From: Macrostomum lignano
Taxonomy: Eukaryota
Direction: 5' to 3'
Length of the DNA stretch: 64,000 bases
Assembly (NCBI GenBank): GCA_002269645.1
Contig: NIVC01003181.1
Coordinates: 49,653 to 113,652 of the forward strand
Of the stretch, positions 10,366 through 55,900 are shown piece after piece (the stretch's first letter is position 1; every line of letters begins with the position of its first letter). A program made the translations under genes and the position numbers. Below the pieces are notes generated by a model, which saw nothing but the letters and a program-made list of their open reading frames with translations, did not search any database and had not been told where the DNA came from.

Positions 10366-11414
10366 GTCCCTTTTCTTTTTTGCTAAGCCATGGCTAAGGC
10401 TTATCTGAATAAGTGCGGACTTGATAAACACACTCCTCCCTTAAACTTGTTACTAAGCTGCGTTATGTCCACAATTTATTTACTTTTAATCTACTACTAT
10501 GAGTAGTGCAAGCTCCCCATGAAAAAATGAATGCTAAATGCGTATTGATTGCTAGCCTATGCTGTCTTTATTCTCTGTCCTAATATTGCTCTTGTGCATC
10601 GCTTGTAGGTGTCACTTACCTGACAACTAAATGCTCAACCAGTTCGAGTAGCAACATAACCTGAAGGCACCGTTTCTATCTCTGTTATTAATCAGTTAAT
10701 CCATAATAAAATAATATACACAGCAACGTGCACGCCTATGCTGCTGCGCATTTTGTCTCTCTTCAACTGTCTGAATTTTGAGCCCCAATTCTTTTTCAAA
10801 ACAGTCTTTGTTGTTCACTTGGTCAAATTGATGCGGTGTGTTTCCGGTTTGGAATCAATTATTAGATATAGTCACATGTGTCATTTTTATCATTTTGGTA
10901 TATAGGACTACGCTTAACAGACTACTAGCATGAGTAGCCAAAAAAGTTTTTAAATAGGTTGTGTTTAGAGTGTAGCTCGTATTGCTCGGATCTATCTAGC
11001 TAAAGAAATATTCCAAATAGCCCAGCCTTTAGCGAAGGTGTTGGAAAACTTTTTAACTCGAGAGCCAGATAGGGAACCCAGCGCTTGGCTGCGGGCCAAA
11101 GGTGGGGAGAGAGGAAAGATAAGAAAAAGGAGAGGCAATGGGATAAAGGCGAAGTTAGAAGAGAAATGAAATAGGAGATGAGATGAGAGAAGGGAGAAGG
11201 GAGAGGAGAGTAGATTGAGAGAAGAGAGCTGAGAAGAGACAGAAACCTCGAGCGGACCCTTAGGGCCTTATAGGGAAGCTCTGTGGGCCGCATGTGGCAC
11301 GCGGGTTGGAGTTTGCCGACACCTGCTTTAGTCAGTAGTCCCGACTCTTCTATAATCTTATTTTAAAATATGATTATTTAATATTTCAGCGCGGCGCCCG
11401 CTGCCCCAGCCCGC

Positions 11415-16249: not shown

Positions 16250-16735
16250 AAGGGTGCCATTTCCTTTTTGTGAGGGCGCCATTTCATTTGTGTGAGGGCG
16301 CCATTTATTTGTTCGGGGCGCCATTTATTTGTGTGAGGGCGCCATTTCATTTGTGTGAGGGCGCCATTTCATTTGTGTGAGGGCGCCATTTCATTTGTGT
16401 GAGGTCGCCATTTCATTTGTATGAGGGCGCCATTTCATTTGTATGAGGGTGCCATTTCATTTGTATGAGGGCGCCATTTCATTTGTGTGAGGACGCCATT
16501 TTATTTGTGTGAGGGCGCCATTTCATTTGTGTGAGGTCGCCATTTTATTTGTGTGAGGGCGCCATTTTATTTGTGTGAGGGCGCCATGTTATTTGTGTGA
16601 GGACGCCATTTCATTTGTGTGAGGACGCCATTTCATTTGTGAGGGCGCCTTTTCATTTGTGTGAGGGCGCCATTTATTTGTTCGGGGGCACCATTTCATT
16701 TGTGTGAGGGCGCCATTTCACTTGAGAGGGCGCCC
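16250..16735. repeat. 22-bp minisatellite (gagggcgccatttcatttgtgt)
   Basis: About 21 tandem copies downstream of SYNRG, preceded by caggcttagccagga (16218). Confidence 0.92.
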
Positions 16736-21000: not shown

Positions 21001-24000
21001 CCGCCTCACTCTCCCCTCCTGTCTTTCTCTCCCGCCTCACTCTCCCCTCCTGTCTTTCTCTCCCGCCTCACTCTCCCCTCCTGTCTCTCTCCCCCGCCTC
21101 ACTCTCTCCTCTGTCTCTCTTCTGCGCCTCACCCTCTCCAGCCTCCCTAATTTTTCCTCTCCGCGCCAAAATCCGCCCTCATCAGTTCTGTCATCATTTT
21201 CCAATCAGCAAAATAATTCCCAGAGCGCAAATCCTCTATCAGCAGGAATCGAGTAGAATTGGTTTTTGAATAAATCAGGCATTAATCTGCATCCCGCTGA
21301 GGCTGTCAACTTCAGCTGGGCGCCGAAGACCAGCGTTTCATGGAATCCCATGAGGATTAGGGGTTGAGGGCCGCAGCAGGCATACGCTCCGATGCAAAGG
21401 CCAATCTGAAGGATGCCCAAGTTTTAACAAAAATTATTGGGAAAAAAGCTAAAGATAGCAGCCGGCTTTTTGAGGAGCCATTCTTTCCCAGGAGAGCTGA
21501 AACCGGAATGCTGAGTGGCCGCCAGCTCCCGAAACCTTCATCTCCCTCTCCTCCACTCTCTCCTCTCCTCCTGTCTCCTCTCCTCCTGTCTCCTCTCCTC
21601 CTGTCTCCTCTCCCCATGTCTCCTCTCCCCCTGTCTCCTCTCGCCTGTCTCCTCTCCCCCTGTCTCCTCTCCCCATGTCTCCTCTCCTCCTGTCTCCTCT
21701 CCCCATGTCTCCTCTCGCCTGTCTCCTCTCCCCCTGTCTCCTCTCCCCATGTCTCCTCTCCTCCTGTCTCCTCTCCCCATGTCTCCTCTCCTCCTGTCTC
21801 CTCTCCCCCTGTCTCCTCTCCCCCTGTCTCCTCTCCCCATGTCTCCTCTCCTCCTGTCTCCTCTCCCCCTGTCTCCTCTCCCCCTGTCTCCTCTCCCCCC
21901 CATGTCTCCTCTCCTCCTGTCTCCTCTCCCCATGTCTCCTCTCGCCTGTCTCCTCTCCCCCTGTCTCCTCTCCCCATGTCTCCTCTCCTCCTGTCTCCTC
22001 TCCCCCTGTCTCCTCTCCCCCTGTCTCCTCTCCCCATGTCTCCTCTCCTCCTGTCTCCTCTCCCCCTGTCTCCTCTCCCCCTGTCTCCTCTCCCCATGTC
22101 TCCTCTCCTCCTGTCTCCTCTCCTCCTGTCTCCTCTCGCCTGTCTCCTCTCCCCCTGTCTCCTCTCCCCATGTCTCCTCTCCTCCTGTCTCCTCTCCTCC
22201 TGTCTCCTCTCCCCATGTCCCCTCTCCCCATGTCTCCTCTCCCCCTGTCTCCTCTCGCCTGTCTCCTCTCGCCTGTCTCCTCTCCCCCTGTCTCCTCTCC
22301 CCATGTCTCCGGCCTCTTCCCTGTCTCCTCTCCCCCTGTCTCCTCTCCCCCTCCCCCTGTCTCCTCTCCCCCTGTCTCCTCTCCCCCTGTCTCTTCTCCC
22401 CATGTCTCCTCTCCCCATGTCTCCTCTCCCCCTGTCTCCTCTCCCCCTGTCTCCTCTCCCCCTGTCTCCTCTCCCCATGTCTCCTCTTCCTTGTCTCCTC
22501 TCCCCCTGTCTCCTCTCCCCCTCCCCCTGTCTCCTCTCCCCCTGTCTCCTCTCCCCCTGTCTCCTCTCCCCATGTCTCCTCTTCTCCTGTCTCCTCTCCC
22601 CCTGTCTCCTCTCCCCCTGTCTCCTCTCCCCCTGTCTCCTCTCCCCATGTCTCCTCTCCCCCTGTCTCCTCTCCCCCTGTCTCCTCTCCCCATGTCTCCT
22701 CTCCTCCTGTCTCCTCTCCCCCTGTCTCCTCTCCCCCTGTCTCCTCTCCCCATGTCTCCTCTCCTCCTGTCTCCTCTCCCCATGTCTCCTCTCGCCTGTC
22801 TCCTCTCCCCCTGTCTCCTCTCCCCATGTCTCCTCTCCTCCTGTCTCCTCTCCCCCTGTCTCCTCTCCCCCTGTCTCCTCTCCCCATGTCTCCTCTCCTC
22901 CTGTCTCCTCTCCCCCTGTCTCCTCTCCCCATGTCTCCTCTCCCCATGTCTCCTCTCCTCCTGTCTCCTCTCCCCCTGTCTCCTCTCGCCTGTCTCCTCT
23001 CCCCATGTCTCCTCTCCCCCTGTCTCCTCTCGCCTGTCTCCTCTCCCCTTGTCTCCTTTCCCACTCCTGTCTCCATCACCACAAGCTCATATTTTGATTG
23101 AACTGGACTAGCTTATGCTCTAGTTGCTTTAGAAAGAGATTTTACTCGCATTCAGACTAAGTTTACTAAAACTTCGAATCGAATTCAACTAAACAGAATT
23201 GGCCTAACTTCAGCTGTATGAGTAGCCAAGATAACGCAGAAATGCGCCTCACCTGCCCCGTATAAATTGAAGAGGTTGTTTAGAGGAATACTATTGTATT
23301 TAGCTACTCCTAATTCTGCAGGTCTCCTGGACATTTCAATGGGCATTCAAAGCCTAATGAATAATTAATTAGGCGCTGGTTTACAGTCTCTCTCTTTCTC
23401 CGAGCCCAGCACCCAGCTTTTGAATTGATTGAAACGGTTATGGATTTACCTGATTATAAAGGGTTGGGCTATGAGTCACTAACAATCAACTATCCATAAT
23501 TCTCATGATTCAGTATCAGTGCCTATCTTGGGGGTGGAGGCTTTGCATGAGTAGTAGTGGGAGGCTCAAAGATTAGTTTATCAGACTCGTCACATGACAG
23601 ATATAAGCTGAAATGTCGCTAGTTATTAATGTTGTTGGCGTTGTACTGTTGATAAAGTAGAGTGGAGTAGAGTAGAGTAGAGTAGAACGGAGTAGAGTAG
23701 ACTAGATTAATTTAGAGTAGAGTGGATTGGGTTAGAGTAGAGTAAAGAGGAGCAGAGTGGAGTAAAGTATAATGAAGTAGAGTGGAGTAGAGTAGAGCAG
23801 AATAGATCCGTAGAGTAGAGTAGAGTAGATTGGAGTAGAGTAGATTAGAGTAGAGTAGATTTTAGCAAGGTAGAGTAGAGTAGAGAAAAGTAGAGTAGAA
23901 TAGAGTAGAGTAGATTGGAGTTAAGTAAACTAGAATTGATTTGGGTAGAGTAAGTGATCAGTGTGTGATTATGTCACAGCACAGTGCGAGGTAGCGTAGC

Positions 24001-24535
24001 GTATCGCTTAGTCCCCCCCCCCAACTCACCCACCCCAAGACTCACCGGTTCTGCACGGCTCGCACTCGCACCGCGGCTTCCGGTTGGCGTCCAAGCCGCA
24101 GCGCTGGCCACTTGGGCACCGGAAGTCCGCGCACGGATTGCAGCGGCCTCTGTACATCGCCTTGACCTGGTAGACAGCGTGACAGGAGGCCCGCATCAGG
24201 TGGCACAGGCTGGGGTAGGTTCGCCCGTCGCTGCCGCACACTTCGCCGCTGTCCTCGGAGTCGCCGACGTTCCAGCAGGTGTTCGGGCAGACGCACCTGT
24301 ACAGGTTGTCCACGTTGACAGCGGGTACGCAGAGGGCATTGTTAGGGCAGGTGGCGTTTTCGCACGGGTTCCGCCAGTTCCGATAGCGGAAGCAGCAGCC
24401 GCCGCCGCTGGCGAAGGGGCTGGCGCAGGCCAGGGCGGCCGCGGAGGACGCTGTCCACAGCAGAAGGCAGCGAATCAGTATGCTGCACTTCAATGAGCCG
24501 CCGCTGCTGTAACAGCCAACAGCAATGGACGGCAT
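18078..24535 (-). CDS. Secreted protein with five Kazal/follistatin domains (agrin N-terminal-like), 3 exons, 475 aa
   Basis: Exons 24046-24535, 18877-19552 and 18078-18339 (GT-AG, phases 1 and 2 match, total 1428 nt). Hydrophobic N-terminus, five VCG(S/T)D(G/E)xTY..C.L..C Kazal cores and a basic tail. Confidence 0.88.
18530..18850. repeat. ~19-20-bp minisatellite (ggggagacaccggttaca) in Kazal-gene intron 2
   Basis: Direct reading of degenerate tandem units. Confidence 0.85.
19850..21135. repeat. Pyrimidine-rich ~28-30-bp minisatellite (ccgcctcactctcccctcctgtctttctctc) in Kazal-gene intron 1
   Basis: Tandem units, nearly all C/T on the + strand. Confidence 0.93.
21540..23065. repeat. Pyrimidine-rich 15-bp minisatellite (ctgtctcctctcccc) in Kazal-gene intron 1
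   Basis: About 100 tandem units with cc/ca/tc variants. Confidence 0.95.
23650..23950. repeat. Degenerate (AGTAG)n microsatellite
   Basis: Direct reading. Confidence 0.9.
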
Positions 24536-27500
24536 CGGAATTCTTTTATAGTGCCGTCAGTGTAGTGGCTAACTAATGTTTGCTATGAGATTATTATCGA
24601 CAATATGACACTATTAAGGTGTCGCACCATTGCCAATGGGTTTAGAGAAGGGCTGAGAGGCTGAGTATATCCGCTGTTGAAATAGAGATTGATCAACTGG
24701 GGCTGATTGGATCTCTCGCTTGCTCACTCCTCCTGGCTTCCAAATATGGGAATAAAATCGCTCCCAACTATTTATCCCCCCTTAGGATGTGGCAGAGCTG
24801 AGGAGGGCAGAGGGGGTGGGGGTTGGGGAGCAGAGCCAAGGAGACCACAAAACCCAGAGCCTGGAGTTGCCAGCTCTTCTCCAGACCTCCTGCAGCAGAA
24901 GATTTTTGCGGCGCATTGATGAGTTCCAGTGGGTGCCAAAATGAGTGCCAGTGGGTGCCAAAATGAATGCCAGTGGGTGCCAAAATGAGTTCCAGTGGGT
25001 GCCAAAATGAATGCCAGTGGGTGCCAAAATGAATGCCAGTGGGTGCCAAAATGAATACCAGTGGGTGCCAAAATGAATGCCAGTGGGTGCCAAAATGAAT
25101 GCCAGTGGGTGCCTAAATGAATGCCAGTGGGTGCCAAAATTAATGCCAGTGGGTGCCAAAATGAGTTCCAGTGGGTGCCAAAATTTGAATGCCAGTGGGT
25201 GCCTAAATGAATGCCTGTGGGTGCCAAAATGAGTGCCAGTGGGTGCCTAAATGAATGCCAGTGGGTGCCAAAATGAGTGCCAAAATGAGTGCCAAAATGA
25301 GTGCCAAAATGAATGCCAGTGGGTGCCAAAATGAGTGCCAGTGGGTGCCAAAATGAATGCCAGTGGGTGCCAAAATGAATGCCAGTGGGTGCCTAAATGA
25401 ATGCCAGTGGGTGCCAAAATGAATGCCAGTGGATGCCAAAATGAGTTTCAGTGGGTGCCAAAATGAATGCCAGTGGGTGCCAAAATGAATGCCAGTGGGT
25501 GCCAAAATGAGTGCCAGTGGGTGCCAAAATGAATGCCTGTGGGTGCCAAAATGAGTGCCAGTGGGTGCCAAAATGAGTGCCAGTGGGTGCCAAAATGAAT
25601 GCCAGTGGGTGCCTAAATGAATGCCAGTGGGTGCCAAAATGAATGCCAGTGGGTGCCAAAATGAGTGCCAAAATGAGTGCCAAAATGAATGCCTGTGGGT
25701 GCCAAAATGAGTGCCAGTGGGTGCCAAAATGAATGCCAGTGGGTGCCAAAATGAATGCCAGTGGGTGCCTAAATGAATGCCAGTGGGTGCCTAAATGAAT
25801 GCCAGTGGGTGCCAAAATGAATGCCAGTGGGTGCCAAAATGAATGCCAGTGGGTGCCAAAATGAGTGCCAAAATGAGTGCCAAAATGAGTGCCAAAATGA
25901 GTGCCAAAATGAATGCCTGTGGGTGCCGAAATGAGTGCCAGTGGGTGCCAAAATGAATGCCAGTGGGTGCCAAAATGAATGCCTGTGGGTGCCTAAATGA
26001 ATGCCAGTGGGTGCCAAAATGAATGCCAGTGGGTGCCAAAATGAGTTTCAGTGGGTGCCAAAATGAATGCCAGTGGGTGCCAAAATGAATGCCAGTGGGT
26101 GCCAAAATGAGTGCCAGTGGGTGCCAAAATGAATGCCAGTGGGTGCCAAAATGAGTGCCAGTGGGTGCCAAAATGAATGCCAGTGGGTGCCAAAATGAAT
26201 GCCAGTGGGTGCCAAAATGAGTGCCAGTGGGTGCCAAAATGAATGCCAGTGGTGCCAAAATGAGTGCCAGTGGGTGCCAAAATGAATGCCTGTGGGTGCC
26301 AAAATGAATGCCAGTGGGTGCCAAAATGAATGCCAGTGGGTGCCAAAATTAATGCCAGTGGGTGCCAAAATGAGTTCCAGTGGGTGCCAAAATGAATGCC
26401 AGTGGGTGCCAAAATGAATGCCAGTGGGTGCCAAAATGAATACCAGTGGGTGCCAAAATGAATGCCAGTGGGTGCCAAAATGAATGCCAGTGGGTGCCAA
26501 AATGAATGCCAGTGGGTGCCAAAATTAATGCCAGTGGGTGCCAAAATGAGTTCCAGTGGGTGCCAAAATGAATGCCAGTGGGTGCCTAAATGAATGCCTG
26601 TGGGTGCCAAAATGAGTGCCAGTGGGTGCCAAAATGAATGCCAGTGGGTGCCAAAATGAGTGCCAAAATGAGTGCCAAAATGAGTGCCAAAATGAATGCC
26701 AGTGGGTGCCAAAATGAGTGCCAGTGGGTGCCAAAATGAATACCAGTGGGTGCCAAAATGAATGCCAGTGGGTGCCTAAATGAATGCCAGTGGGTGCCAA
26801 AATGAATGCCAGTGGATGCCAAAATGAGTTTCAGTGGGTGCCAAAATGAATGCCAGTGGGTGCCAAAATGAGTGCCAGTGGGTGCCAAAATGAGTGCCAG
26901 TGGGTGCCTAAATGAATGCCAGTGGGTGCCAAAATGAATGCCAGTGGGTGCCAAAATGAATGCCAGTGGGTGCCAAAATGAGTGCCAAAATGAGTGCCAA
27001 AATGAGTGCCAAAATGAGTGCCAAAATGAATGCCTGTGGGTGCCAAAATGAGTGCCAGTGGGTGCCAAAATGAATGCCAGTGGTGCCAAAATGAATGCCA
27101 GTGGGTGCCTAAATGAATGCCAGTGGTGCCAAAATGAATGCCAGTGGGTGCCAAAATGAGTTTCAGTGGGTGCCAAAATGAATGCCAGTGGGTGCCAAAA
27201 TGAATGCCAGTGGGTGCCAAAATGAGTGCCAGTGGGTGCCAAAATGAATGCCAGTGGGTGCCAAAATGAGTGCCAGTGGGTGCCAAAATGAATGCCAGTG
27301 GGTGCCAAAATGAATGCCAGTGGGTGCCAAAATGAGTGCCAGTGGGTGCCAAAATGAATGCCAGTGGGTGCCAAAATGAATGCCTGTGGGTGCCAAAATG
27401 AGTGCCAGTGGGTGCCAAAATGAATGCCAGTGGGTGCCAAAATGAGTTTCAGTGAGTGCCAAAATGAATACCAGTGGTGCCAAAATGAATGCCAGTGGGT

Positions 27501-28242
27501 GCCAAAATGAGTGCCAGTGGGTGCCAAAATGAATGCCAGTGGGTGCCAAAATGAATGCCAGTGGGTGCCAAAATGAATGCCAGTGGGTGCCAAAATGAAT
27601 GCCAGTGGGTGCCAAAATGAGTGCCAGTGGGTGCCAAAATGAATGCCAGTGGGTGCCAAAATGAGTGCCAGTGGGTGCCAAAATGAATGCCTGTGGGTGC
27701 CAAAATGAGTGCCAGTGGGTGCCAAAATGAGTGCCAGTGGGTGCCAAAATGAATGCCTGTGGGTGCCAAAATGAATGCCAGTGGGTGCCAAAATGAATGC
27801 CAGTGGGTGCCAAAATGAGTGCCAGTGGGTGCCAAAATGAGTGCCAGTGGGTGCCAAAATGAATGCCAGTGGGTGCCAAAATGAATGCCAGTGGGTGCCT
27901 AAATGAATGCCAGTGGGTGCCAAAATGAATGCCAGTGGGTGCCAAAATGAGTGCCAGTGGGTGCCAAAATGAATGCCAGTGGGTGCCAAAATGAGTGCCA
28001 GTGGGTGCCAAAATGAGTGCCAGTGGGTGCCAAAATGAATGCCTGTGGGTGCCAAAATGAGTGCCAGTGGTGCCAAAATGAGTGCCAGTGGGTGCCAAAA
28101 TGAATGCCTGTGGGTGCCAAAATGAGTGCCAGTGGTGCCAAAATGAATGCCAGTGGGTGCCAAAATGAATGCCAGTGGGTGCCAAAATGAGTGCCAGTGG
28201 TGCCAAAATGAATGCCTGTGGGTGCCAAATGAGTGCCGGTGG

Positions 28243-28618
28243 CATAGATAAAGTATACCATAGATTCCACCCTACCCCCGCGGAGTGTCTAAATTGTGAC
28301 CATCACTTTATTCACTGCGCTCCTATTGGCTGGGCCACGCTATGCACATTGAGTCCACGTGTGTACATTCCCCCAACTCCGCTTTTCTATTATCTCCGCT
28401 TTAACTGTTGAAACTGGTAAGACATCCTTTCGTTCCGCGCATTAAAGTTATAAAGCTTTCTTGTGTGGAAGGGGTGAGGGAATGAAATCGAAGGTGTTAA
28501 AAGGAAGGCTTTCGCGCCAGCCAATGAGAGCACGGTGAGTTTTATGGTGGTCAAAGTTTGGACACGAGCGTGTGTACATTCTGGGCAGGGGTGGAATCTA
28601 TGGTATACTTTATCTATG
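28243..28618. mobile_element. Fold-back MITE copy 1 (TIR CATAGATAAAGTATACCATAGATTCCACCCCT, candidate 8-bp TSD CCGGTGGG; P-superfamily-like)
   Basis: Terminal inverted repeats plus a longer imperfect internal inverted repeat; the left TSD lacks one G in this copy. Confidence 0.85.
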
Positions 28619-30037
28619 CCGGTGGGTGCCAAAATGAATGCCTGTGGGTGCCAAAATGAGTGCCAGTGGGTGCCAAAATGAATGCCAGTGGGTGCCAAAA
28701 TGAGTGCCAGTGGGTGCCAAAATGAATGCCAGTGGGTGCCAAAATGAATGCCAGTGGGTGCCAAAATGAGTGCCAGTGGGTGCCAAAATGAATGCCAGTG
28801 GGTGCCAAAATGAGTGCCAGTGGGTGCCAAAATGAATGCCTGTGGGTGCCAAAATGAATGCCAGTGGTGCCAAAATGAATGCCAGTGGGTGCCAAAATTA
28901 ATGCCAGTGGGTGCCAAAATGAGTTCCAGTGGGTGCCAAAATGAATGCCAGTGGGTGCCAAAATGAGTGCCAAAATGAGTGCCAAAATGAGTGCCAAAAT
29001 GAGTGCCAAAATGAATGCCTGTGGGTGCCAAAATGAGTGCCAGTGGGTGCCAAAATGAATGCCAGTGGGTGCCAAAATGAATGCCAGTGGGTGCCTAAAT
29101 GAATGCCAGTGGGTGCCAAAATGAATGCCAGTGGGTGCCAAAATGAGTTTCAGTGGGTGCCAAAATGAATGCCAGTGGGTGCCAAAATGAATGCCAGTGG
29201 GTGCCAAAATGAGTGCCAGTGGGTGCCAAAATGAATGCCAGTGGGTGCCAAAATGAGTGCCAGTGGGTGCCAAAATGAATGCCAGTGGGTGCCAAAATGA
29301 ATGCCAGTGGGTGCCAAAATGAATGCCAGTGGGTGCCAAAATGAATGCCAGTGGGTGCCAAAATGAGTGCCAGTGGGTGCCAAAATGAATGCCTGTGGGT
29401 GCCAAAATGAGTGCCAGTGGGTGCCAAAATGAGTTTCAGTGGGTGCCAAAATGAATGCCTGTGGGTGCCAAAATGAATGCCAGTGGGTGCCAAAATGAAT
29501 GCCAGTGGGTGCCAAAATGAGTGCCAGTGGGTGCCAAAATGAATGCCTGTGGGTGCCAAAATGAATGCCAGTGGGTGCCAAAATGAATGCCAGTGGGTGC
29601 CTAAATGAATGCCAGTGGGTGCCAAAATGAATGCCAGTGGGTGCCAAAATGAGTGCCAGTGGGTGCCAAAATGAATGCCAGTGGGTGCCAAAATGAGTGC
29701 CAGTGGGTGCCAAAATGAGTGCCAGTGGGTGCCAAAATGAATGCCTGTGGGTGCCAAAATGAGTGCCAGTGGGTGCCAAAATGAGTGCCAGTGGGTGCCA
29801 AAATGAATGCCTGTGGGTGCCAAAATGAGTGCCAGTGGGTGCCAAAATGAATGCCAGTGGGTGCCAAAATGAATGCCAGTGGGTGCCAAAATGAGTGCCA
29901 GTGGGTGCCAAAATGAATGCCAGTGGGTGCCAAAATGAGTGCCAGTGGGTGCCAAAATGAGTGCCAGTGGGTGCCAAAATGAGTGCCGGTGGGTGCCAAA
30001 ATGAATGCCTGTGGGTGCCAAAATGAGTGCCGGTGGG

Positions 30038-30413
30038 CATAGATAAAGTATACCATAGATTCCACCCCTACCCCGCGGAGTGTCTAAATTGTGACCATCA
30101 CTTTATTCACTGCGCTCCTATTGGCTGGGCCACGCTATGCACATTGAGTCCACGTGTGTACATTCCCCCAACTCCGCTTTTCTATTATCTCCGCTTTAAC
30201 TGTTGAAACTGGTAAGACATCCTTTCGTTCCGCGCATTAAAGTTATAAAGCTTTCTTGTGTGGAAGGGGTGAGGGAATGAAATCGAAGGTGTTGAAAGGA
30301 AGGCTTTCGCGCCAGCCAATGAGAGCACGGTGAGTTTTATGGTGGTCAAAGTTTGGACACGAGCGTGTGTACATTCTGGGCAGGGGTGGAATCTATGGTA
30401 TACTTTATCTATG
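30038..30413. mobile_element. Fold-back MITE copy 2
   Basis: Same sequence; flanks gagtg-CCGGTGGG|catag...ctatg|CCGGTGGG-tgcc. Confidence 0.87.
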
Positions 30414-31723
30414 CCGGTGGGTGCCAAAATGAATGCCTGTGGGTGCCAAAATGAGTGCCAGTGGGTGCCAAAATGAGTGCCAAAATGAGTGCCAAAATGA
30501 ATGCCAGTGGGTGCCAAAATGAGTGCCAGTGGGTGCCAAAATGAATGCCAGTGGGTGCCAAAATGAGTGCCAGTGGGTGCCAAAATGAATGCCTGTGGGT
30601 GCCAAAATGAGTGCCGGTGGGTGCCAAAATGAATGCCAGTGGATGCCAAAATGAATGCCTGTGGGTGCCAAAATGAGTGCCGGTGGGTGCCAAAATGAAT
30701 GCCTGTGGGTGCCAAAATGAGTGCCAGTGGGTGCCAAAATGAGTGCCAAAATGAGTGCCAAAATGAATGCCAGTGGGTGCCAAAATGAATGCCTGTGGGT
30801 GCCAAAATGAATGCCAGTGGGTGCCAAAATGAGTGCCAGTGGGTGCCAAAATGAATGCCTGTGGGTGCCAAAATGAGTGCCAGTGGGTGCCAAAATGAAT
30901 GCCAGTGGGTGCCAAAATGAGTGCCAGTGGGTGCCAAAATGAATGCCAGTGGGTGCCAAAATGAGTGCCAGTGGGTGCCAAAATGAATGCCTGTGGGTGC
31001 CAAAATGAGTGCCGGTGGGTGCCAAAATGAATGCCAGTGGATGCCAAAATGAATGCCTGTGGGTGCCAAAATGAATGCCTGTGGGTGCCAAAATGAGTGC
31101 CAGTGGGTGCCAAAATGAGTGCCAGTGGGTGCCAAAATGAATGCCAGTGGGTGCCAAAATGAATGCCAGTGGGTGCCTAAATGAATGCCAGTGGGTGCCA
31201 AAATGAGTGCCAGTGGGTGCCAAAATGAATGCCTGTGGGTGCCAAAATGAATGCCAGTGGGTGCCAAAATGAATGCCAGTGGGTGCCTAAATGAATGCCA
31301 GTGGGTGCCAAAATGAATGCCAGTGGGTGCCAAAATGAGTGCCAGTGGGTGCCAAAATGAATGCCAGTGGGTGCCAAAATGAGTGCCAGTGGGTGCCAAA
31401 ATGAGTGCCAGTGGGTGCCAAAATGAGTGCCAGTGGGTGCCAAAATGAATGCCAGTGGGTGCCAAAATGAGTGCCAGTGGGTGCCAAAATGAATGCCTGT
31501 GGGTGCCAAAATGAGTGCCAGTGGGTGCCAAAATGAATGCCAGTGGGTGCCAAAATGAATGCCAGTGGGTGCCAAAATGAGTGCCAGTGGGTGCCAAAAT
31601 GAATGCCAGTGGGTGCCAAAATGAGTGCCAGTGGGTGCCAAAATGAGTGCCAGTGGGTGCCAAAATGAGTGCCGGTGGGTGCCAAAATGAATGCCTGTGG
31701 GTGCCAAAATGAGTGCCGGTGGG

Positions 31724-32099
31724 CATAGATAAAGTATACCATAGATTCCACCCCTACCCCCGCGGAGTGTCTAAATTGTGACCATCACTTTATTCACTGC
31801 GCTCCTATTGGCTGGGCCACGCTATGCACATTGAGTCCACGTGTGTACATTCCCCAACTCCGCTTTTCTATTATCTCCGCTTTAACTGTTGAAACTGGTA
31901 AGACATCCTTTCGTTCCGCGCATTAAAGTTATAAAGCTTTCTTGTGTGGAAGGGGTGAGGGAATGAAATCGAAGGTGTTGAAAGGAAGGCTTTCGCGCCA
32001 GCCAATGAGAGCACGGTGAGTTTTATGGTGGTCAAAGTTTGGACACGAGCGTGTGTACATTCTGGGCAGGGGTGGAATCTATGGTATACTTTATCTATG
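31724..32099. mobile_element. Fold-back MITE copy 3
   Basis: Same sequence and same flanks. Confidence 0.87.
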
Positions 32100-33077
32100 C
32101 CGGTGGGTGCCAAAATGAATGCCTGTGGGTGCCAAAATGAGTGCCAGTGGGTGCCAAAATGAATGCCAGTGGGTGCCAAAATGAGTGCCAGTGGGTGCCA
32201 AAATGAATGCCAGTGGGTGCCAAAATGAATGCCAGTGGGTGCCAAAATGAGTGCCAGTGGGTGCCAAAATGAATGCCAGTGGGTGCCAAAATGAGTGCCA
32301 GTGGGTGCCAAAATGAATGCCTGTGGGTGCCAAAATGAATGCCAGTGGGTGCCAAAATGAATGCCAGTGGGTGCCAAAATTAATGCCAGTGGGTGCCAAA
32401 ATGAGTTCCAGTGGGTGCCAAAATGAATGCCAGTGGGTGCCAAAATGAGTGCCAAAATGAGTGCCAAAATGAGTGCCAAAATGAGTGCCAAAATGAATGC
32501 CTGTGGGTGCCAAAATGAGTGCCAGTGGGTGCCAAAATGAATGCCAGTGGGTGCCAAAATGAATGCCAGTGGGTGCCAAAATGAATGCCTGTGGGTGCCA
32601 AAATGAATGCCAGTGGGTGCCAAAATGAATGCCAGTGGGTGCCTAAATGAATGCCAGTGGGTGCCAAAATGAATGCCAGTGGGTGCCAAAATGAGTGCCA
32701 GTGGGTGCCAAAATGAATGCCAGTGGGTGCCAAAATGAGTACCAGTGGGTGCCAAAATGAGTGCCAGTGGGTGCCAAAATGAATGCCTGTGGGTGCCAAA
32801 ATGAGTGCCAGTGGGTGCCAAAATGAGTGCCAGTGGGTGCCAAAATGAATGCCTGTGGGTGCCAAAATGAGTGCCAGTGGGTGCCAAAATGAATGCCAGT
32901 GGGTGCCAAAATGAATGCCAGTGGGTGCCAAAATGAGTGCCAGTGGGTGCCAAAATGAATGCCAGTGGGTGCCAAAATGAGTGCCAGTGGGTGCCAAAAT
33001 GAGTGCCAGTGGGTGCCAAAATGAGTGCCGGTGGTGCCAAAATGAATGCCTGTGGGTGCCAAAATGAGTGCCGGTGG

Positions 33078-33454
33078 CATAGATAAAGTATACCATAGAT
33101 TCCACCCCTACCCCCGCGGAGTGTCTAAATTGTGACCATCACTTTATTCACTGCGCTCCTATTGGCTGGGCCACGCTATGCACATTGAGTCCACGTGTGT
33201 ACATTCCCCCAACTCCGCTTTTCTATTATCTCCGCTTTAACTGTTGAAACTGGTAAGACATCCTTTCGTTCCGCGCATTAAAGTTATAAAGCTTTCTTGT
33301 GTGGAAGGGGTGAGGGAATGAAATCGAAGGTGTTGAAAGGAAGGCTTTCGCGCCAGCCAATGAGAGCACGGTGAGTTTTATGGTGGTCAAAGTTTGGACA
33401 CGAGCGTGTGTACATTCTGGGCAGGGGTGGAATCTATGGTATACTTTATCTATG
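33078..33454. mobile_element. Fold-back MITE copy 4
   Basis: Same sequence; the left TSD lacks one G. Confidence 0.87.
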
Positions 33455-34632
33455 CCGGTGGGTGCCAAAATGAATGCCTGTGGGTGCCAAAATGAGTGCC
33501 AGTGGGTGCCAAAATGAGTGCCAAAATGAGTGCCAAAATGAATGCCAGTGGGTGCCAAAATGAGTGCCAGTGGGTGCCAAAATGAATGCCAGTGGGTGCC
33601 AAAATGAGTGCCAGTGGGTGCCAAAATGAATGCCTGTGGGTGCCAAAATGAGTGCCGGTGGGTGCCAAAATGAATGCCAGTGGATGCCAAAATGAATGCC
33701 TGTGGGTGCCAAAATGAGTGCCGGTGGGTGCCAAAATGAATGCCTGTGGGTGCCAAAATGAGTGCCAGTGGGTGCCAAAATGAGTGCCAAAATGAGTGCC
33801 AAAATGAATGCCAGTGGGTGCCAAAATGAATGCCTGTGGGTGCCAAAATGAATGCCAGTGGGTGCCAAAATGAGTGCCAGTGGGTGCCAAAATGAATGCC
33901 TGTGGGTGCCAAAATGAGTGCCGGTGGGTGCCAAAATGAATGCCAGTGGATGCCAAAATGAATGCCTGTGGGTGCCAAAATGAATGCCTGTGGGTGCCAA
34001 AATGAGTGCCAGTGGGTGCCAAAATGAGTGCCAGTGGGTGCCAAAATGAATGCCAGTGGGTGCCAAAATGAATGCCAGTGGGTGCCTAAATGAATGCCAG
34101 TGGGTGCCAAAATGAATGCCAGTGGGTGCCAAAATGAGTTTCAGTGGGTGCCAAAATGAATGCCAGTGGGTGCCAAAATGAGTGCCAGTGGGTGCCAAAA
34201 TGAATGCCAGTGGGTGCCAAAATGAGTGCCAGTGGGTGCCAAAATGAATGCCAGTGGGTGCCAAAATGAATGCCAGTGGGTGCCAAAATGAGTGCCAGTG
34301 GGTGCCAAAATGAATGCCAGTGGGTGCCAAAATGAGTGCCAGTGGGTGCCAAAATGAATGCCAGTGGGTGCCAAAATGAGTGCCAGTGGGTGCCAAAATG
34401 AATGCCTGTGGGTGCCAAAATGAGTGCCAGTGGGTGCCAAAATGAGTGCCAGTGGGTGCCAAAATGAGTGCCAGTGGGTGCCAAAATGAATGCCTGTGGG
34501 TGCCAAAATGAGTGCCAGTGGGTGCCAAAATGAATGCCAGTGGGTGCCAAAATGAATGCCAGTGGGTGCCAAAATGAGTGCCAGTGGGTGCCAAAATGAA
34601 TGCCTGTGGGTGCCAAAATGAGTGCCGGTGGG

Positions 34633-35009
34633 CATAGATAAAGTATACCATAGATTCCACCCCTACCCCCGCGGAGTGTCTAAATTGTGACCATCACTTT
34701 ATTCACTGCGCTCCTATTGGCTGGGCCACGCTATGCACATTGAGTCCACGTGTGTACATTCCCCCAACTCCGCTTTTCTATTATCTCCGCTTTAACTGTT
34801 GAAACTGGTAAGACATCCTTTCGTTCCGCGCATTAAAGTTATAAAGCTTTCTTGTGTGGAAGGGGTGAGGGAATGAAATCGAAGGTGTTAAAAGGAAGGC
34901 TTTCGCGCCAGCCAATGAGAGCACGGTGAGTTTTATGGTGGTCAAAGTTTGGACACGAGCGTGTGTACATTCTGGGCAGGGGTGGAATCTATGGTATACT
35001 TTATCTATG
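34633..35009. mobile_element. Fold-back MITE copy 5
   Basis: Same sequence and same flanks; shares the gtgttAaaagg variant with copy 1. Confidence 0.87.
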
Positions 35010-36429
35010 CCGGTGGGTGCCAAAATGAATGCCTGTGGGTGCCAAAATGAGTGCCAGTGGGTGCCAAAATGAATGCCAGTGGGTGCCAAAATGAGTGCCA
35101 GTGGGTGCCAAAATGAATGCCAGTGGGTGCCAAAATGAATGCCAGTGGGTGCCAAAATGAGTGCCAGTGGGTGCCAAAATGAATGCCAGTGGGTGCCAAA
35201 ATGAGTGCCAGTGGGTGCCAAAATGAATGCCTGTGGGTGCCAAAATGAATGCCAGTGGGTGCCAAAATGAATGCCAGTGGGTGCCAAAATTAATGCCAGT
35301 GGGTGCCAAAATGAGTTCCAGTGGGTGCCAAAATGAATGCCAGTGGGTGCCAAAATGAGTGCCAAAATGAGTGCCAAAATGAGTGCCAAAATGAGTGCCA
35401 AAATGAATGCCTGTGGGTGCCAAAATGAGTGCCAGTGGGTGCCAAAATGAATGCCAGTGGGTGCCAAAATGAATGCCAGTGGGTGCCTAAATGAATGCCA
35501 GTGGGTGCCAAAATGAATGCCAGTGGGTGCCAAAATGAGTTTCAGTGGGTGCCAAAATGAATGCCAGTGGGTGCCAAAATGAATGCCAGTGGGTGCCAAA
35601 ATGAGTGCCAGTGGGTGCCAAAATGAATGCCAGTGGGTGCCAAAATTAGTGCCAGTGGGTGCCAAAATGAATGCCAGTGGGTGCCAAAATGAATGCCAGT
35701 GGGTGCCAAAATGAATGCCAGTGGGTGCCAAAATGAATGCCAGTGGGTGCCAAAATGAGTGCCAGTGGGTGCCAAAATGAATGCCTGTGGGTGCCAAAAT
35801 GAGTGCCAGTGGGTGCCAAAATGAGTGCCAGTGGGTGCCAAAATGAATGCCTGTGGGTGCCAAAATGAATGCCAGTGGGTGCCAAAATGAATGCCAGTGG
35901 GTGCCAAAATGAGTGCCAGTGGGTGCCAAAATGAATGCCTGTGGGTGCCAAAATGAATGCCAGTGGGTGCCAAAATGAATGCCAGTGGGTGCCTAAATGA
36001 ATGCCAGTGGGTGCCAAAATGAATGCCAGTGGGTGCCAAAATGAGTGCCAGTGGGTGCCAAAATGAATGCCAGTGGGTGCCAAAATGAGTGCCAGTGGGT
36101 GCCAAAATGAGTGCCAGTGGGTGCCAAAATGAATGCCTGTGGGTGCCAAAATGAGTGCCAGTGGGTGCCAAAATGAGTGCCAGTGGGTGCCAAAATGAAT
36201 GCCTGTGGGTGCCAAAATGAGTGCCAGTGGGTGCCAAAATGAATGCCAGTGGGTGCCAAAATGAATGCCAGTGGGTGCCAAAATGAGTGCCAGTGGGTGC
36301 CAAAATGAATGCCAGTGGGTGCCAAAATGAGTGCCAGTGGGTGCCAAAATGAGTGCCAGTGGGTGCCAAAATGAGTGCCGGTGGGTGCCAAAATGAATGC
36401 CTGTGGGTGCCAAAATGAGTGCCGGTGGG

Positions 36430-36806
36430 CATAGATAAAGTATACCATAGATTCCACCCCTACCCCCGCGGAGTGTCTAAATTGTGACCATCACTTTATT
36501 CACTGCGCTCCTATTGGCTGGGCCACGCTATGCACATTGAGTCCACGTGTGTACATTCCCCCAACTCCGCTTTTCTATTATCTCCGCTTTAACTGTTGAA
36601 ACTGGTAAGACATCCTTTCGTTCCGCGCATTAAAGTTATAAAGCTTTCTTGTGTGGAAGGGGTGAGGGAATGAAATCGAAGGTGTTGAAAGGAAGGCTTT
36701 CGCGCCAGCCAATGAGAGCACGGTGAGTTTTATGGTGGTCAAAGTTTGGACACGAGCGTGTGTACATTCTGGGCAGGGGTGGAATCTATGGTATACTTTA
36801 TCTATG
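36430..36806. mobile_element. Fold-back MITE copy 6
   Basis: Same sequence and same flanks. Confidence 0.87.
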
Positions 36807-38468
36807 CCGGTGGGTGCCAAAATGAATGCCTGTGGGTGCCAAAATGAGTGCCAGTGGGTGCCAAAATGAGTGCCAAAATGAGTGCCAAAATGAATGCCAG
36901 TGGGTGCCAAAATGAATGCCTGTGGGTGCCAAAATGAATGCCAGTGGGTGCCAAAATGAGTGCCAGTGGGTGCCAAAATGAATGCCTGTGGGTGCCAAAA
37001 TGAGTGCCAGTGGGTGCCAAAATGAATGCCAGTGGGTGCCAAAATGAGTGCCAGTGGGTGCCAAAATGAATGCCAGTGGGTGCCAAAATGAGTGCCAGTG
37101 GGTGCCAAAATGAATGCCTGTGGGTGCCAAAATGAGTGCCGGTGGGTGCCAAAATGAATGCCAGTGGATGCCAAAATGAATGCCTGTGGGTGCCAAAATG
37201 AGTGCCGGTGGGTGCCAAAATGAATGCCTGTGGGTGCCAAAATGAATGCCAGTGGGTGCCAAAATGAATGCCTGTGGGTGCCAAAATGAGTGCCAGTGGG
37301 TGCCAAAATGAGTGCCAGTGGGTGCCAAAATGAATGCCAGTGGGTGCCAAAATGAATGCCTGTGGGTGCCAAAATGAGTGCCAGTGGGTGCCAAAATGAG
37401 TGCCAGTGGGTGCCAAAATGAGTTCCAGTGGGTGCCAAAATGAATGCCTGTGGGTGCCAAAATGAGTGCCAGTGGATGCCAAAATGAGTGCCAGTGGGTG
37501 CCAAAATGAGTGCCAGTGGGCGCCAGTGAGTTAATTTTTAGTTTATTGGTCAACTTTCGGTCGTTTCCCTCGCTTTGAAATCCAAGAAATTTGCGTTACT
37601 ACAAGGTTCTCAGTTCCCTTAGAGCAGAGCCTATCTATATATGGTCGTATGGGATTGGCAGCAGAGTCCCAACCGTGGGCAGATCCGCGTGACACCTTCA
37701 GTGTGCTCGTGTAGTTATAGCTAATCCACCGAAATGTGCCATGCAATATAGATAGATCACTCAGGCCTTAACTAGTTACAGTTACGGTCTGCGAGATCCA
37801 TAAACTAAGGAAGTTTGGCTAACTGGTCCCCCGTTCTACCCTGTCAGAGTTGATCCGCTCTCGCCGGCTAGCTATGCTACATTTATAATGGCCTATAGCT
37901 GTAGCGACTCCAACACTGCATGCTGCAGTAATGATGATGCGTGAGACTGTATAGGTGCACTAGTATATCTAGGCAGATGAAACTCCAGCTGCATTCCCAA
38001 CCTCCATCCGGCCCGGTGCAAGCCCGGTGCTCCTAACCTGTCCCTCCGGCTCAGCAACGCTAACGCTGCAGCGGACATCTCCCCCACCTCCCCCCCCACA
38101 CACACACAGACCCAGGGGTCAATTTAACTGAAAGCCTATACAGACTGCGTGGAACAGTCGTTTGAGCAGAGAGCCTATTTTACAGCTATTTATTATACAA
38201 CGTACATAGATACACAGTTGGGAAAATTGCAGGAACTTCAATCCCGGCCAATTCACTGGGAATTGAATAGATATATACACTCTGATCTGGGAATAGGAGG
38301 ATTTCTACAGCTTTCAATCCCTTGCTTGAATCCGCGCCGGACTTTCCTAATCCGTTCAGACTTGTAGCGCCTTGTTTCCCACTGTGTCCTTGCGATTAAT
38401 AAAGTACTTTCTTTTGAGTGCCTACAAGCTAGGTTGTCTATGACCCAAACTCCAACTTTCGGTTTCAG

Positions 38469-38723
38469 CCATGGATGAATAATATAACTGGATCGCCAGA
38501 AGCTCGATTTTTTGGTCCTAGCCATAGACAAGCACCAGCATCACAAGAAGCTCAGAATGCCGTACTTTCAAATAAATACTTATAAATAAAGGTTTGCAGC
38601 TTCTGCAGCGGCTATTTGTCTATGTGGCATTCTGAGCTTCTTGTGATGCTGGTGCTTGTCTATGGCTAGGACCAAAAAAATCGAGCTTCTGGCGATCCAG
38701 TTATATTATTTATTCATCCATGG
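38469..38723. mobile_element. 255-bp fold-back element with ~93-98-bp near-perfect inverted arms
   Basis: Arms 38469-38561 and 38626-38723 (ccatggatgaataa...ctcagaatgcc and its reverse complement); no TSD seen. Confidence 0.75.
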
Positions 38724-40835: not shown

Positions 40836-41603
40836 ATGAGCGCCACCGTAGCTAAAGCCGCCGGGCAGAAGAAGCCGTCGAAGCCCAAATCGCACCCGTC
40901 CTACACGGACATGATCAGCGCCGCCATTGCCGCCTTGAAAGAGCGCAAAGGATCCAGCCGGCAGGCCATCACCAAGTACCTGCTAGCCAATTACAAGTTC
41001 AACTCGGACGAGAAAATCGACTTCTACGTTAAGGCCGCTTTGAAGGCCGGCAGCAAGAGCGGCCGCTATGTGCACACCAAAGGCGTTGGCGCCACCGGGT
41101 CCTTCCAGCTGGCCAAGAAGGAGTCCGCCGCCAAGTCTAAGAAGCCGATGGCTCCCAAGTCGCCAAACAAGGCTAAATCGCCCATCGCTAGCAAGAAGCC
41201 GAAGTCGCCGGCCGCCAAGAAGGCCAAGTCACCCGCCGCCGCCAAAAAGCCGAAATCTCCGGCCGCGGCCAAGAAGCCAAAGTCGCCAGTTGCGGCCAAA
41301 AAGCCAAGTTCGCCGGTTGCCGCCAAGCGGGCCAAATCTCCAGTGGCCAAGAAGCCGAGATCTCCCAAACCTATGAAGGCCAAATCGCCGGCTGGCAAGC
41401 GGGTCGCCGCCAAGCCGAGCGAGGCTGCTGCGGCTGCTCCCGAGCCCGCCGCTGCCCCTGCGGCCCCGGCCGCTGTCGCCGCCAAGCCCAACAGCAGAGC
41501 TGGCAAAAAGGGCGCCGCCCCCGCCGCTGCCGGTGGCGCCAAGCCGAAATCGAAGACCCCGACCAAGGCCAAGAAGGCCGCGCCCGCCAAGGCTAAGAAA
41601 TAA
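40836..41603 (+). CDS. H1: Linker histone H1/H5 family, intronless, 255 aa
   Basis: Globular domain [41 protein letters not shown] followed by a K/A/P-rich tail. Confidence 0.95.

Positions 41604-42840: not shown

Positions 42841-55900
<13,060 letters not shown>

What the first reader, a model, noticed from the sequence alone, without database searches (positions are those of the whole stretch)
24919..37526. 12.6-kb gene-flanking satellite in which one transposon insertion was amplified six times as a higher-order repeat
Seen: six near-identical 376-377-bp inserts start at 28243, 30038, 31724, 33078, 34633 and 36430 (spacings 1795, 1686, 1354, 1555, 1797). All sit at the same base of the same rare ccggtggg variant unit, while the left 3.3 kb has none. 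Inference: a single insertion followed by unequal-exchange amplification of MITE-plus-satellite blocks, a snapshot of a TE-satellite composite forming. The array starts only ~390 bp upstream of the Kazal gene ATG, so it may set that gene's chromatin state.
Basis: partly seen in the sequence, partly recalled or inferred. Interest (0 to 1): 0.7.

Follow-up and report, generated by a model that had tools for sequence, protein, structure and literature searches.

The report
Transposon copied along with its satellite
A small non-coding transposon landed once in a 12.6-kb array of 22-bp repeats next to a Kazal-type gene and was then copied six-fold with blocks of the surrounding repeats by recombination; it is a clear new example of a process already described in other genomes.

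Summary
A 22-bp tandem array (about 470 units) spans 24919-37526. Six 376-377-bp inserts start at the stated coordinates. Each has a perfect 30-bp terminal inverted repeat and an 8-bp target-site duplication, CCGGTGGG, and all six share one orientation. Removing an insert and one duplication restores an in-register repeat unit identical to two unoccupied sites in the array. The copies differ by three one-base C-run indels and one A/G substitution.

The single-insertion-plus-recombination reading is well supported but needs refining. The blocks between inserts alternate between two types (I, II, I, II, I, II). Type I blocks are 99.8-99.9% identical. Left flank, SNP and right flank occur in three combinations. 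So amplification took several rounds with different breakpoints, not one unit copied six times. The insert-free left 3.3 kb already has its own periodicity of about 1.4 kb.

Identical target-site duplications on same-strand transposon copies inside satellites have been reported for Gypsy, LINE, endogenous retrovirus and ATHILA elements, and were read there as one integration copied by host recombination. This is a new member of a known kind. The suggested effect on the Kazal gene's chromatin is untested, and copy number needs checking with spanning reads.

The parts
24919..37526 (.). 22-bp tandem array (consensus TGCCAAAATGAATGCCAGTGGG, about 470 unit equivalents) including the six inserts
   Evidence: TRF. 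Monomer census. No copy of the unit elsewhere in the window.
24919..28242 (.). Insert-free left part of the array (about 158 units). It has its own higher-order periodicity of about 1.38-1.40 kb and no CCGGTGGG unit except the last one.
28243..28618 (+). MITE copy 1 (376 bp). Left-flank class S, SNP A, followed by a type I block.
30038..30413 (+). MITE copy 2 (376 bp). Left-flank class Lg, SNP G, followed by a type II block.
31724..32099 (+). MITE copy 3 (376 bp). Left-flank class Lg and SNP G, but followed by a type I block (mixed combination).
33078..33454 (+). MITE copy 4 (377 bp). Left-flank class Lg, SNP G, followed by a type II block.
34633..35009 (+). MITE copy 5 (377 bp). Left-flank class S, SNP A, followed by a type I block. 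Near-twin of copy 1, 6390 bp away.
36430..36806 (+). MITE copy 6 (377 bp). Left-flank class Lg, SNP G, followed by a type II block.
28619..30037 (.). Type I satellite block (67 units). The other type I blocks are 32100-33077 (same with one clean 440-bp deletion) and 35010-36429.
   Evidence: for the variant strings; with the preceding MITE included, block 1 vs block 5 shows 3 mismatches in 1795 bp, and block 1 vs block 3 shows 2 mismatches plus one 440-bp gap.
30414..31723 (.). Type II satellite block (62 units). The other type II blocks are 33455-34632 (one 132-bp gap, 18 mismatches) and 36807-37526 (266-bp deletion; ends the array).
30644..30721 (.). Unoccupied paralogue of the insertion site (units T-C-T-G, uninterrupted CCGGTGGG at 30680). 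A second one starts at 33685.
   Evidence: identical to the sequence obtained by removing a MITE plus one target-site duplication.
24029..24535 (-). First coding exon of the neighbouring Kazal-domain gene. Further Kazal exons lie at 18876-19580 and 18081-18392 on the minus strand.
   Evidence: Pfam Kazal_2, E = 2e-9 to 5e-28. ATG context.

Best explanation
A non-autonomous DNA transposon (a MITE of about 376 bp) inserted once into one CCGGTGGG-variant unit of a 22-bp minisatellite. It has a 30-bp perfect terminal inverted repeat, makes an 8-bp target-site duplication, and has no coding capacity. The array already had kb-scale higher-order structure.

Out-of-register homologous recombination within the array then duplicated the MITE together with about 1-1.4 kb of adjoining repeats. 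The likely forms are unequal sister-chromatid exchange, non-allelic homologous recombination or template switching. The two resulting blocks diverged through unit-scale insertions and deletions into types I and II. Further exchanges with different breakpoints brought the count to six MITEs in the alternating order I-II-I-II-I-II. One of these probably spanned about 6.4 kb, or four blocks. Later deletions of 440, 132 and 266 bp modified individual blocks.

Shown directly: the transposon hallmarks, the identical site and orientation, the empty paralogous sites, the co-duplicated flanks, the alternation and the three flank/SNP classes. Inferred: the recombination mechanism and the order of events. 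The structure most likely has no function of its own. It is a recent, probably copy-number-variable, by-product of array turnover.
For: - **Terminal inverted repeat:** the 30-mer matches 12 times against 0 expected, and the inverted repeat extends to 36 bp with one mismatch.
- **Fold:** the element folds back strongly, z = -9.
- **No RNA family:** it has no Rfam match.
- **Coding capacity:** the longest stop-free stretch is 75 codons.
- **Insertion site:** CCGGTGGG sits on both sides of all six copies. Removing the insert plus one duplication gives an in-register unit string identical to the unoccupied sites at 30644 and 33685.
- **Near-identical copies:** they differ by three single-C indels and one SNP.
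- **Block structure:** the variant strings alternate between two block types. Type I blocks are 99.8-99.9% identical with at most one large gap. Blocks 2 and 4 of type II are 98.8% identical with one 132-bp gap. Cross-type alignments need 8 or more gaps.
- **Periodicities:** rare 66-mers recur at 1.35-1.8 kb, 2.9-3.5 kb and 6.39 kb.
- **Flank classes:** the left flanks fall into {1,5} and {2,3,4,6}, matching the SNP. The right flanks fall into {1,3,5} and {2,4,6}.
- **Published precedent:** the same signature is read the same way in the literature.
Against: - No copy of the element lies outside the array in this window. The public scans found none either: two metagenome scans gave nothing and a prokaryote-genome scan gave one chance 22-mer. 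Membership of a dispersed mobile family is therefore unproven.
- Copy number rests on a single assembly. The one-base homopolymer differences look like long-read consensus errors, and near-identical blocks are where assemblers expand or collapse repeats.
- No simple order of duplications explains all three flank/SNP combinations without an extra exchange or conversion event.
- Unequal crossing-over cannot be told apart from rolling-circle or break-induced replication using sequence alone.
Confidence: 0.82

Rival explanations
1. Six independent insertions of a site-specific MITE into equivalent CCGGTGGG sites of higher-order repeat copies that already existed.
For: The array had kb-scale higher-order repeats before or independently of the insert, so equivalent sites with similar flanks could have existed. 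The target is GC-rich and specific-looking, and all the duplications are identical.
Against: - All six copies share one orientation even though the ends are perfectly symmetric (1/32 by chance).
- Twelve CCGGTGG octamers are unoccupied, including two sites identical over 78 bp.
- The A/G SNP inside the MITE goes with the flank class, as expected if insert and flank were copied together.
- No copy lies anywhere else in the 64 kb.
- In a related published case, a mariner element sits at the same TA in five MITE copies within ant satellite DNA, and in-vitro tests found no hot spot there.
Confidence: 0.03
2. Assembly artefact: fewer MITE-bearing blocks really exist, and the assembler over-expanded a near-identical repeat or concatenated haplotypes.
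For: Blocks 1 and 5 differ by only 3 substitutions in 1.8 kb. Most differences between the MITE copies are one-base homopolymer indels typical of long-read consensus error. No reads are available.
Against: The blocks carry distinct structural marks: 440-bp, 132-bp and 266-bp unit-scale deletions, and 18 substitutions between blocks 2 and 4. There are also three flank/SNP combinations in an ordered alternating pattern. That argues for at least four or five truly different blocks rather than copies of one.
Confidence: 0.1
3. The insertion history is the same, but amplification went through a circular intermediate: an extrachromosomal circle of one two-block unit (about 3.4 kb) was replicated by rolling circle and re-integrated, rather than successive unequal exchanges.
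For: There are three tandem copies of a two-block unit. Type I blocks are almost identical.
Against: The unit lengths differ (3481, 2909 and 2894 bp). Type II blocks are about ten times more diverged than type I blocks. Copies 1 and 5 share a left flank and a SNP that copy 3 lacks, which a single rolling-circle burst does not predict.
Confidence: 0.07
4. The 376-bp segment is not a transposon. It is either an original spacer of a long composite repeat, or the satellite is the internal tandem repeat of a larger repeat-carrying MITE.
For: Tandem-repeat-containing MITEs and MITE-derived satellites are well documented in bivalves and Xenopus.
Against: Each 376-bp element has its own inverted ends and its own 8-bp duplication, and excising it restores the repeat register. 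The 22-bp units lie outside the inverted repeats, and no similarity to the unit was found inside the element. The left 3.3 kb of the same array lacks the element.
Confidence: 0.02

Closest known systems
Post-integration tandem copying of transposons inside satellite arrays: Gypsy in Anoplius nigerrimus, LINE in Porphyrio hochstetteri, retroviruses in Cervus elaphus centromeres (bioRxiv 10.64898/2026.09.17.752431), and ATHILA in Arabidopsis CEN180 (bioRxiv 10.1101/2021.05.30.446350)
   Same: Several high-identity transposon copies sit on the same strand inside one satellite array and share an identical target-site duplication. The authors read this as a single integration copied by host recombination, possibly by the same process that makes higher-order repeats.
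   Different: Those cases are kb-sized retroelements in megabase centromeric satellites. Here the element is a 376-bp class II MITE in a 12.6-kb array of 22-bp units, in a gene-rich region 383 bp from a gene start. The copies also show an alternating two-block superstructure.
Mboumar mariner / IRE-130 MITE in the satellite DNA of Messor ants (PMC2581405, citing Palomeque et al. 2006)
   Same: A class II element and a MITE are embedded in satellite DNA, with five copies inserted at the very same dinucleotide. In-vitro tests found no hot spot, which leaves copying along with the satellite as one possible explanation.
   Different: That is heterochromatic satellite with a TA target of the Tc1/mariner type. 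Here the duplication is 8 bp and GC-rich, and the surrounding blocks can be read in full.
Transposon tandem dimers as seeds of satellites (McGurk and Barbash 2018, PMC5932611), and reviews of transposon-to-satellite routes (PMC12628747, PMC9659126)
   Same: A transposon becomes part of a tandemly repeated unit through recombination (abstracts seen).
   Different: In the double-insertion model the tandem arises from two transposition events into one another. Here there is one insertion, and the tandem arises from the host array's own turnover.
Tandem-repeat-containing MITEs (bivalve elements, Xenopus miDNA4 and Xstir)
   Same: A MITE and a short tandem repeat are physically associated.
   Different: In those families the repeats lie between the MITE's inverted ends. 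Here the repeats lie outside, and the MITE interrupts them.

Membership tests
MITE (non-autonomous class II DNA transposon) | Terminal inverted repeats | tested here: met
   30 bp perfect, 36 bp with one mismatch, in all six copies.
MITE (non-autonomous class II DNA transposon) | Target-site duplication, with the empty site restored on removal | tested here: met
   8-bp CCGGTGGG on both sides. Two left copies lack one G of the G-run. The restored sequence is identical to the unoccupied sites at 30644 and 33685.
MITE (non-autonomous class II DNA transposon) | Small size and no coding capacity | tested here: met
   376-377 bp. The longest stop-free stretch is 75 codons. No Rfam family matches.
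MITE (non-autonomous class II DNA transposon) | Dispersed multicopy family with different duplications at different loci | tested here: inconclusive
   No other copy in the 64-kb window. None in metagenome or prokaryote collections beyond one chance 22-mer. The source genome is not available in the collections these tools search.
hAT or P superfamily (both make 8-bp duplications; from general knowledge, a lead only) | 8-bp target-site duplication | tested here: met
   A 9-bp reading is possible only if the ends are made asymmetric.
hAT or P superfamily (both make 8-bp duplications; from general knowledge, a lead only) | Superfamily-typical end motif, and an autonomous partner encoding the matching transposase | not testable with these tools
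   The end CATAG does not fit the recalled hAT YARNG motif at its third base. The duplication does not fit the recalled weak hAT nTnnnnAn pattern. A GC-rich 8-bp target and an inverted repeat of about 30 bp starting with CAT recall P elements. No transposon library or source genome was available to test any of this.
Higher-order repeat organisation of a satellite | Multi-monomer blocks more alike than neighbouring monomers, repeated in tandem | tested here: met
   Type I blocks are 99.8-99.9% identical and blocks 2 and 4 of type II are 98.8% identical, against 80-94% TRF matches between units. The dot plot shows periodicities of 1.35-1.8, 2.9-3.5 and 6.4 kb. The block length is not constant.
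Transposon copied after integration within a satellite (single integration plus host recombination) | Same strand, identical duplication, high identity between copies, flanks copied along | tested here: met
Transposon copied after integration within a satellite (single integration plus host recombination) | Centromeric or heterochromatic location, as in the published cases | not testable with these tools
   The context is gene-rich, with a Kazal gene 383 bp to the left and an H1 gene 3.3 kb to the right. That argues against a centromere, but no chromatin or map data exist.
Tandem-repeat-containing MITE (repeats internal to the element) | Tandem repeats located between the element's inverted ends | tested here: not met
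   The 22-bp units lie outside each element's inverted repeats and duplication. No similarity to the unit was found inside the element.

The most novel reading that the evidence does not exclude
The six-fold copying is not neutral. Each MITE carries an inverted pair of CCAAT motifs and a CACGTG E-box, so its multiplication upstream of the Kazal gene would build a repeated cis-regulatory or chromatin-organising module. The MITE would also act as the long unique homology that fixes the register of exchange. This would be a case of a class II element nucleating a new higher-order repeat in a euchromatic, gene-proximal minisatellite with an effect on expression.
Probability: 0.06. Interest if true: 0.55.

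Novelty: new member of a known kind. Interest (0 to 1): 0.3.

Why it matters
The locus is small enough to read completely, which is unusual for a transposon being absorbed into a tandem array. The insertion site, the empty paralogous sites, the two diverged block types and the individual deletions can all be seen base by base. That makes it a useful worked example for models of how composite satellite units arise. It may also be a copy-number-variable marker. It does not reveal a new mechanism. Identical duplications on same-strand transposon copies within satellites have been reported in plants, insects, birds and mammals and read in the same way. Any effect on the adjacent Kazal gene is speculative.

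Tried and rejected
- **Rfam, array and flanks:** an E-value search found nothing in the inserts. It gave only a sub-threshold mir-578 hit on an unrelated palindrome at 38523-38664.
- **Rfam and tRNA, whole window:** no Rfam match at gathering score and no tRNA genes.
- **Other MITE copies or related ends in the window:** none at up to 3 mismatches, and none by sensitive blastn.
- **Public DNA scans:** the MITE-end 22-mer and a 33-mer of the satellite gave 0 hits in metagenome contigs. The prokaryote genome scan gave one hit, in Agathobacter rectalis, that does not extend beyond 23 bases, so I rejected it as chance.
- **Identifying the source organism:**
  - An exact look-up of the H1 protein found nothing.
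  - The best database relatives of the RPN7 exon are only 52% identical.
  - That exon scores best against mammalian PSMD6 (E about 1e-37) and much lower against yeast RPN7 (E about 1e-15).
  - With a VWA_N domain and the Kazal domains, this points to an animal-like eukaryote. I did not pursue it further because the conclusion does not depend on it.
- **The array as coding sequence:** the minus strand of the unit has no stop codon in any frame (ORFs). I estimated by hand that this happens by chance for about one third of random 22-mers. Unit-length variants of 12, 21 and 22 bp show no frame constraint. I rejected this idea.
- **A single clean order of duplications:** I tried to derive one from the flank classes. 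No single simple series fits all three combinations, so the report claims only several events with different breakpoints.
Full report
**1. The observation**

Tandem Repeats Finder reports a single 22-bp-period array from 24919 to 37525. The consensus unit is TGCCAAAATGAATGCCAGTGGG. Without the inserts the array equals about 470 units. The unit occurs nowhere else in the window.

The 30-mer CATAGATAAAGTATACCATAGATTCCACCC occurs 12 times, six on each strand, against 0 expected in shuffles. The matches pair into six inserts:

| Copy | Coordinates | Length (bp) |
|---|---|---|
| 1 | 28243-28618 | 376 |
| 2 | 30038-30413 | 376 |
| 3 | 31724-32099 | 376 |
| 4 | 33078-33454 | 377 |
| 5 | 34633-35009 | 377 |
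| 6 | 36430-36806 | 377 |

The spacings are 1795, 1686, 1354, 1555 and 1797 bp.

**2. What the insert is**

- **Inverted ends:** each insert has a perfect 30-bp terminal inverted repeat, or 36 bp with one mismatch. There is also weaker inverted similarity between positions 44-92 and 286-334.
- **Fold:** as a single strand it folds into one long hairpin. The energy is -80 kcal/mol against -42 ± 4 for shuffles, z = -9.
- **Content:** it has no Rfam match and no reading frame longer than 75 codons.
- **Target-site duplication:** each copy is preceded by ...GAGTGCCGGTGGG and followed by CCGGTGGGTGCC..., an 8-bp direct duplication of CCGGTGGG. In copies 1 and 4 the left duplicate lacks one G of the G-run.
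- **Empty site:** deleting the insert plus one duplicate gives an in-register run of units (T-C-T-G in my variant code). This is letter-for-letter the sequence of two unoccupied sites in the array, at 30644 and 33685.

[quoted passage not shown] An 8-bp duplication is what hAT and P superfamily elements make. That point, and a loose resemblance of the end to P-element ends, come from general knowledge and remain leads, not tests.

One defining feature could not be shown: copies at other loci. There are none elsewhere in the window. None turned up in the public collections I could scan either, apart from one chance 22-mer in a gut bacterium that does not extend.

**3. One insertion or six?**

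- All six copies sit at the same base of the same variant unit, in the same orientation, with the same duplication.
- The six copies differ only by three one-base C-run indels and one A/G substitution at alignment column 258.
- CCGGTGG occurs 24 times in the array. Twelve are the duplicated target sites of the six inserts and 12 are unoccupied, including the two sites identical over 78 bp.
- The flanks are co-duplicated far beyond what a shared target would need.
  - Left flanks of copies 2, 3, 4 and 6 have no mismatch for about 270 bp. Those of copies 1 and 5 have none for about 198 bp. The two groups differ from about 46 bp outward.
  - To the right, blocks 1, 3 and 5 are 99.8-99.9% identical over 1.35-1.8 kb.
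- The A allele of the internal SNP is found only in copies 1 and 5, the two with the distinct left flank. Insert and flank were therefore copied together.

Independent site-specific insertion is very unlikely, at about 3%.

**4. Structure of the amplification**

I coded every unit by its variant. The stretches between inserts fall into two types that alternate.

| Type | Follows copies | Variant pattern | Length (units) |
|---|---|---|---|
| I | 1, 3, 5 | cTGAGAAGAGTAAHUAssssTGAAPAV...GAGGCTC | 67, 47, 67 |
| II | 2, 4, 6 | cTGssAGAGTCETCTGss... | 62, 56, 34 |

Alignments at the nucleotide level, each block taken with its preceding MITE, confirm this:

- **Block 1 vs block 5:** 3 mismatches and two one-base indels in 1795 bp.
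- **Block 3:** the same sequence with one clean 440-bp (20-unit) deletion.
- **Block 2 vs block 4:** 18 mismatches and one 132-bp gap.
- **Block 6:** a 266-bp deletion places its MITE next to what is the empty site in block 2. The block ends with the array.
- **Cross-type alignments:** 8 or more gaps each.

Rare 66-mers recur at 1.35-1.8 kb, at 2.9-3.5 kb (the two-block period) and at 6.39 kb. The repeated entity is therefore better described as a two-MITE superunit of about 2.9-3.5 kb, present three times.

Left flank, SNP and right flank occur in three combinations:

- S-A-I in copies 1 and 5.
- Lg-G-II in copies 2, 4 and 6.
- Lg-G-I in copy 3.

This requires several exchange or conversion events with different breakpoints. 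The near-twin pair of copies 1 and 5 suggests that a recent event spanned about 6.4 kb. I could not derive one unique order of events.

The insert-free left 3.3 kb has its own periodicity of about 1.38-1.40 kb. It shares variant order with type I blocks only through many unit-scale indels. Kb-scale out-of-register exchange therefore operates in this array regardless of the MITE.

**5. Mechanism**

- **Shown:** the insertion, with its inverted ends, duplication and empty site, and the segmental co-duplication of insert and flanks.
- **Inferred:** the duplications arose by out-of-register homologous recombination between sister chromatids or homologues, or by replication template switching. These are the standard ways such arrays expand and contract.

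A rolling-circle intermediate cannot be excluded. It fits poorly with the unequal divergence of type I and type II blocks and with the flank classes.

The very low divergence indicates recent events or ongoing homogenisation. The MITEs differ by at most one substitution in 377 bp, and type I blocks differ by about 0.15%.

**6. Assembly caveat**

Most differences between the MITE copies are homopolymer-length differences typical of long-read consensus error, and no reads are available. The block-specific deletions and substitutions argue that at least four or five distinct blocks are real. The exact count of six still needs spanning reads.

**7. Genomic context**

The Kazal gene lies to the left of the array on the minus strand. 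Its exons at 24029-24556, 18876-19580 and 18081-18392 all match Pfam Kazal_2. The first in-frame ATG is at 24535, which is 383 bp from the array.

An intronless linker-histone H1 gene lies 3.3 kb to the right, at 40836-41603 on the plus strand.

About 47% of the window is tandem repeat, in more than 30 different arrays with units of 3-63 bp. The 22-bp array is the largest by eightfold. The region is gene-rich, so this is a large euchromatic minisatellite, not obviously heterochromatic satellite. Being next to a repeat array is the norm here.

Nothing in the sequence tests the suggestion that the array sets the gene's chromatin state. Each MITE does contain an inverted pair of CCAAT motifs, at positions 84 and 280, and a CACGTG at position 115. 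That is only a lead.

The organism was not identified. The RPN7 exon scores best against mammalian PSMD6 and much lower against yeast RPN7. With a VWA_N domain and the Kazal domains, it looks animal-like.

**8. Comparison with what is known**

A 2026 survey of centromeres describes three such cases:

- five Gypsy elements in a wasp satellite, on the same strand and with identical target-site duplications;
- 11 LINE elements in a bird;
- six retroviruses in deer.

The authors read each as a single integration followed by copying through host recombination.

The Arabidopsis centromere paper reports five ATHILA or solo-LTR duplications made after integration, possibly by the process that generates CEN180 higher-order repeats.

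In Messor ants a mariner element sits at the same TA in five copies of a MITE within satellite DNA. In-vitro tests found no hot spot there.

Reviews list many other transposon-satellite links.

The present case differs in three ways. The element is a 376-bp class II MITE. The array is 12.6 kb of 22-bp units beside genes. The two-block alternating architecture is fully legible. It fails the test for the tandem-repeat-containing MITE family, because the repeats lie outside the element.

**9. Verdict**

It is a new member of a known kind. Interest is 0.3: it is a neat, fully readable example with little surprise for a specialist.

Noticed in passing
window 1-64000: About 47% of the window is tandem repeat: more than 30 different micro- and minisatellite arrays with units of 3-63 bp, many of them 0.4-1.5 kb long, interleaved with genes. 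This is an unusually repeat-dense genic region.
   Followed up: partly
window 19851-23914: A strongly strand-asymmetric CT-rich 31-bp array (19851-21136), a 15-bp array (21545-23062) and an (AGTAG)n tract (23656-23914) lie between Kazal exons on the minus strand, so apparently inside an intron of the same gene.
   Followed up: no
window 38471-38717: A second, unrelated foldback or MITE-like palindrome, with arms of 43-67 nt that are 91-95% complementary. It produces a sub-threshold, evidently spurious mir-578 Rfam hit.
   Followed up: partly
window 40836-41603 (+): An intronless linker-histone H1 gene (Pfam PF00538, E = 8e-27) with a [12 protein letters not shown]-type repeated tail, 3.3 kb to the right of the array. 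Its exact protein is not on record in the public gene-position collection.
   Followed up: partly
window 16251-16724: Another array with a 22-bp period (AGGGCGCCATTTCATTTGTGTG). Its unit shares a CATT.CATTT core with the reverse complement of the main 22-bp unit. This could be a distant relative or chance.
   Followed up: no
window 2840-3313 (-) and about 9014-9200 (+): A dispersed repeat is present twice in opposite orientations, with the same translated stretch ...ITWPFLLATHTCKSLLA.... The second copy lies among the exons of the RPN7 (PSMD6-like) gene.
   Followed up: no
window 24919-37526 (-): The reverse complement of the 22-bp unit has no stop codon in any frame, so ORF lists show 226-308-codon open frames across the array. 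A hand estimate gives this by chance for about a third of random 22-mers, and I do not regard it as coding.
   Followed up: yes
window 8060-9493 (+), 45019-46494 (+), 11382-13916 (+): Neighbouring genes are a proteasome lid subunit RPN7/PSMD6-like gene, a calcium-channel alpha2delta-like gene with VWA_N and VWA domains, and a long low-complexity exon with an EH domain. They point to an animal-like eukaryote that is poorly represented in the searchable collections.
   Followed up: partly
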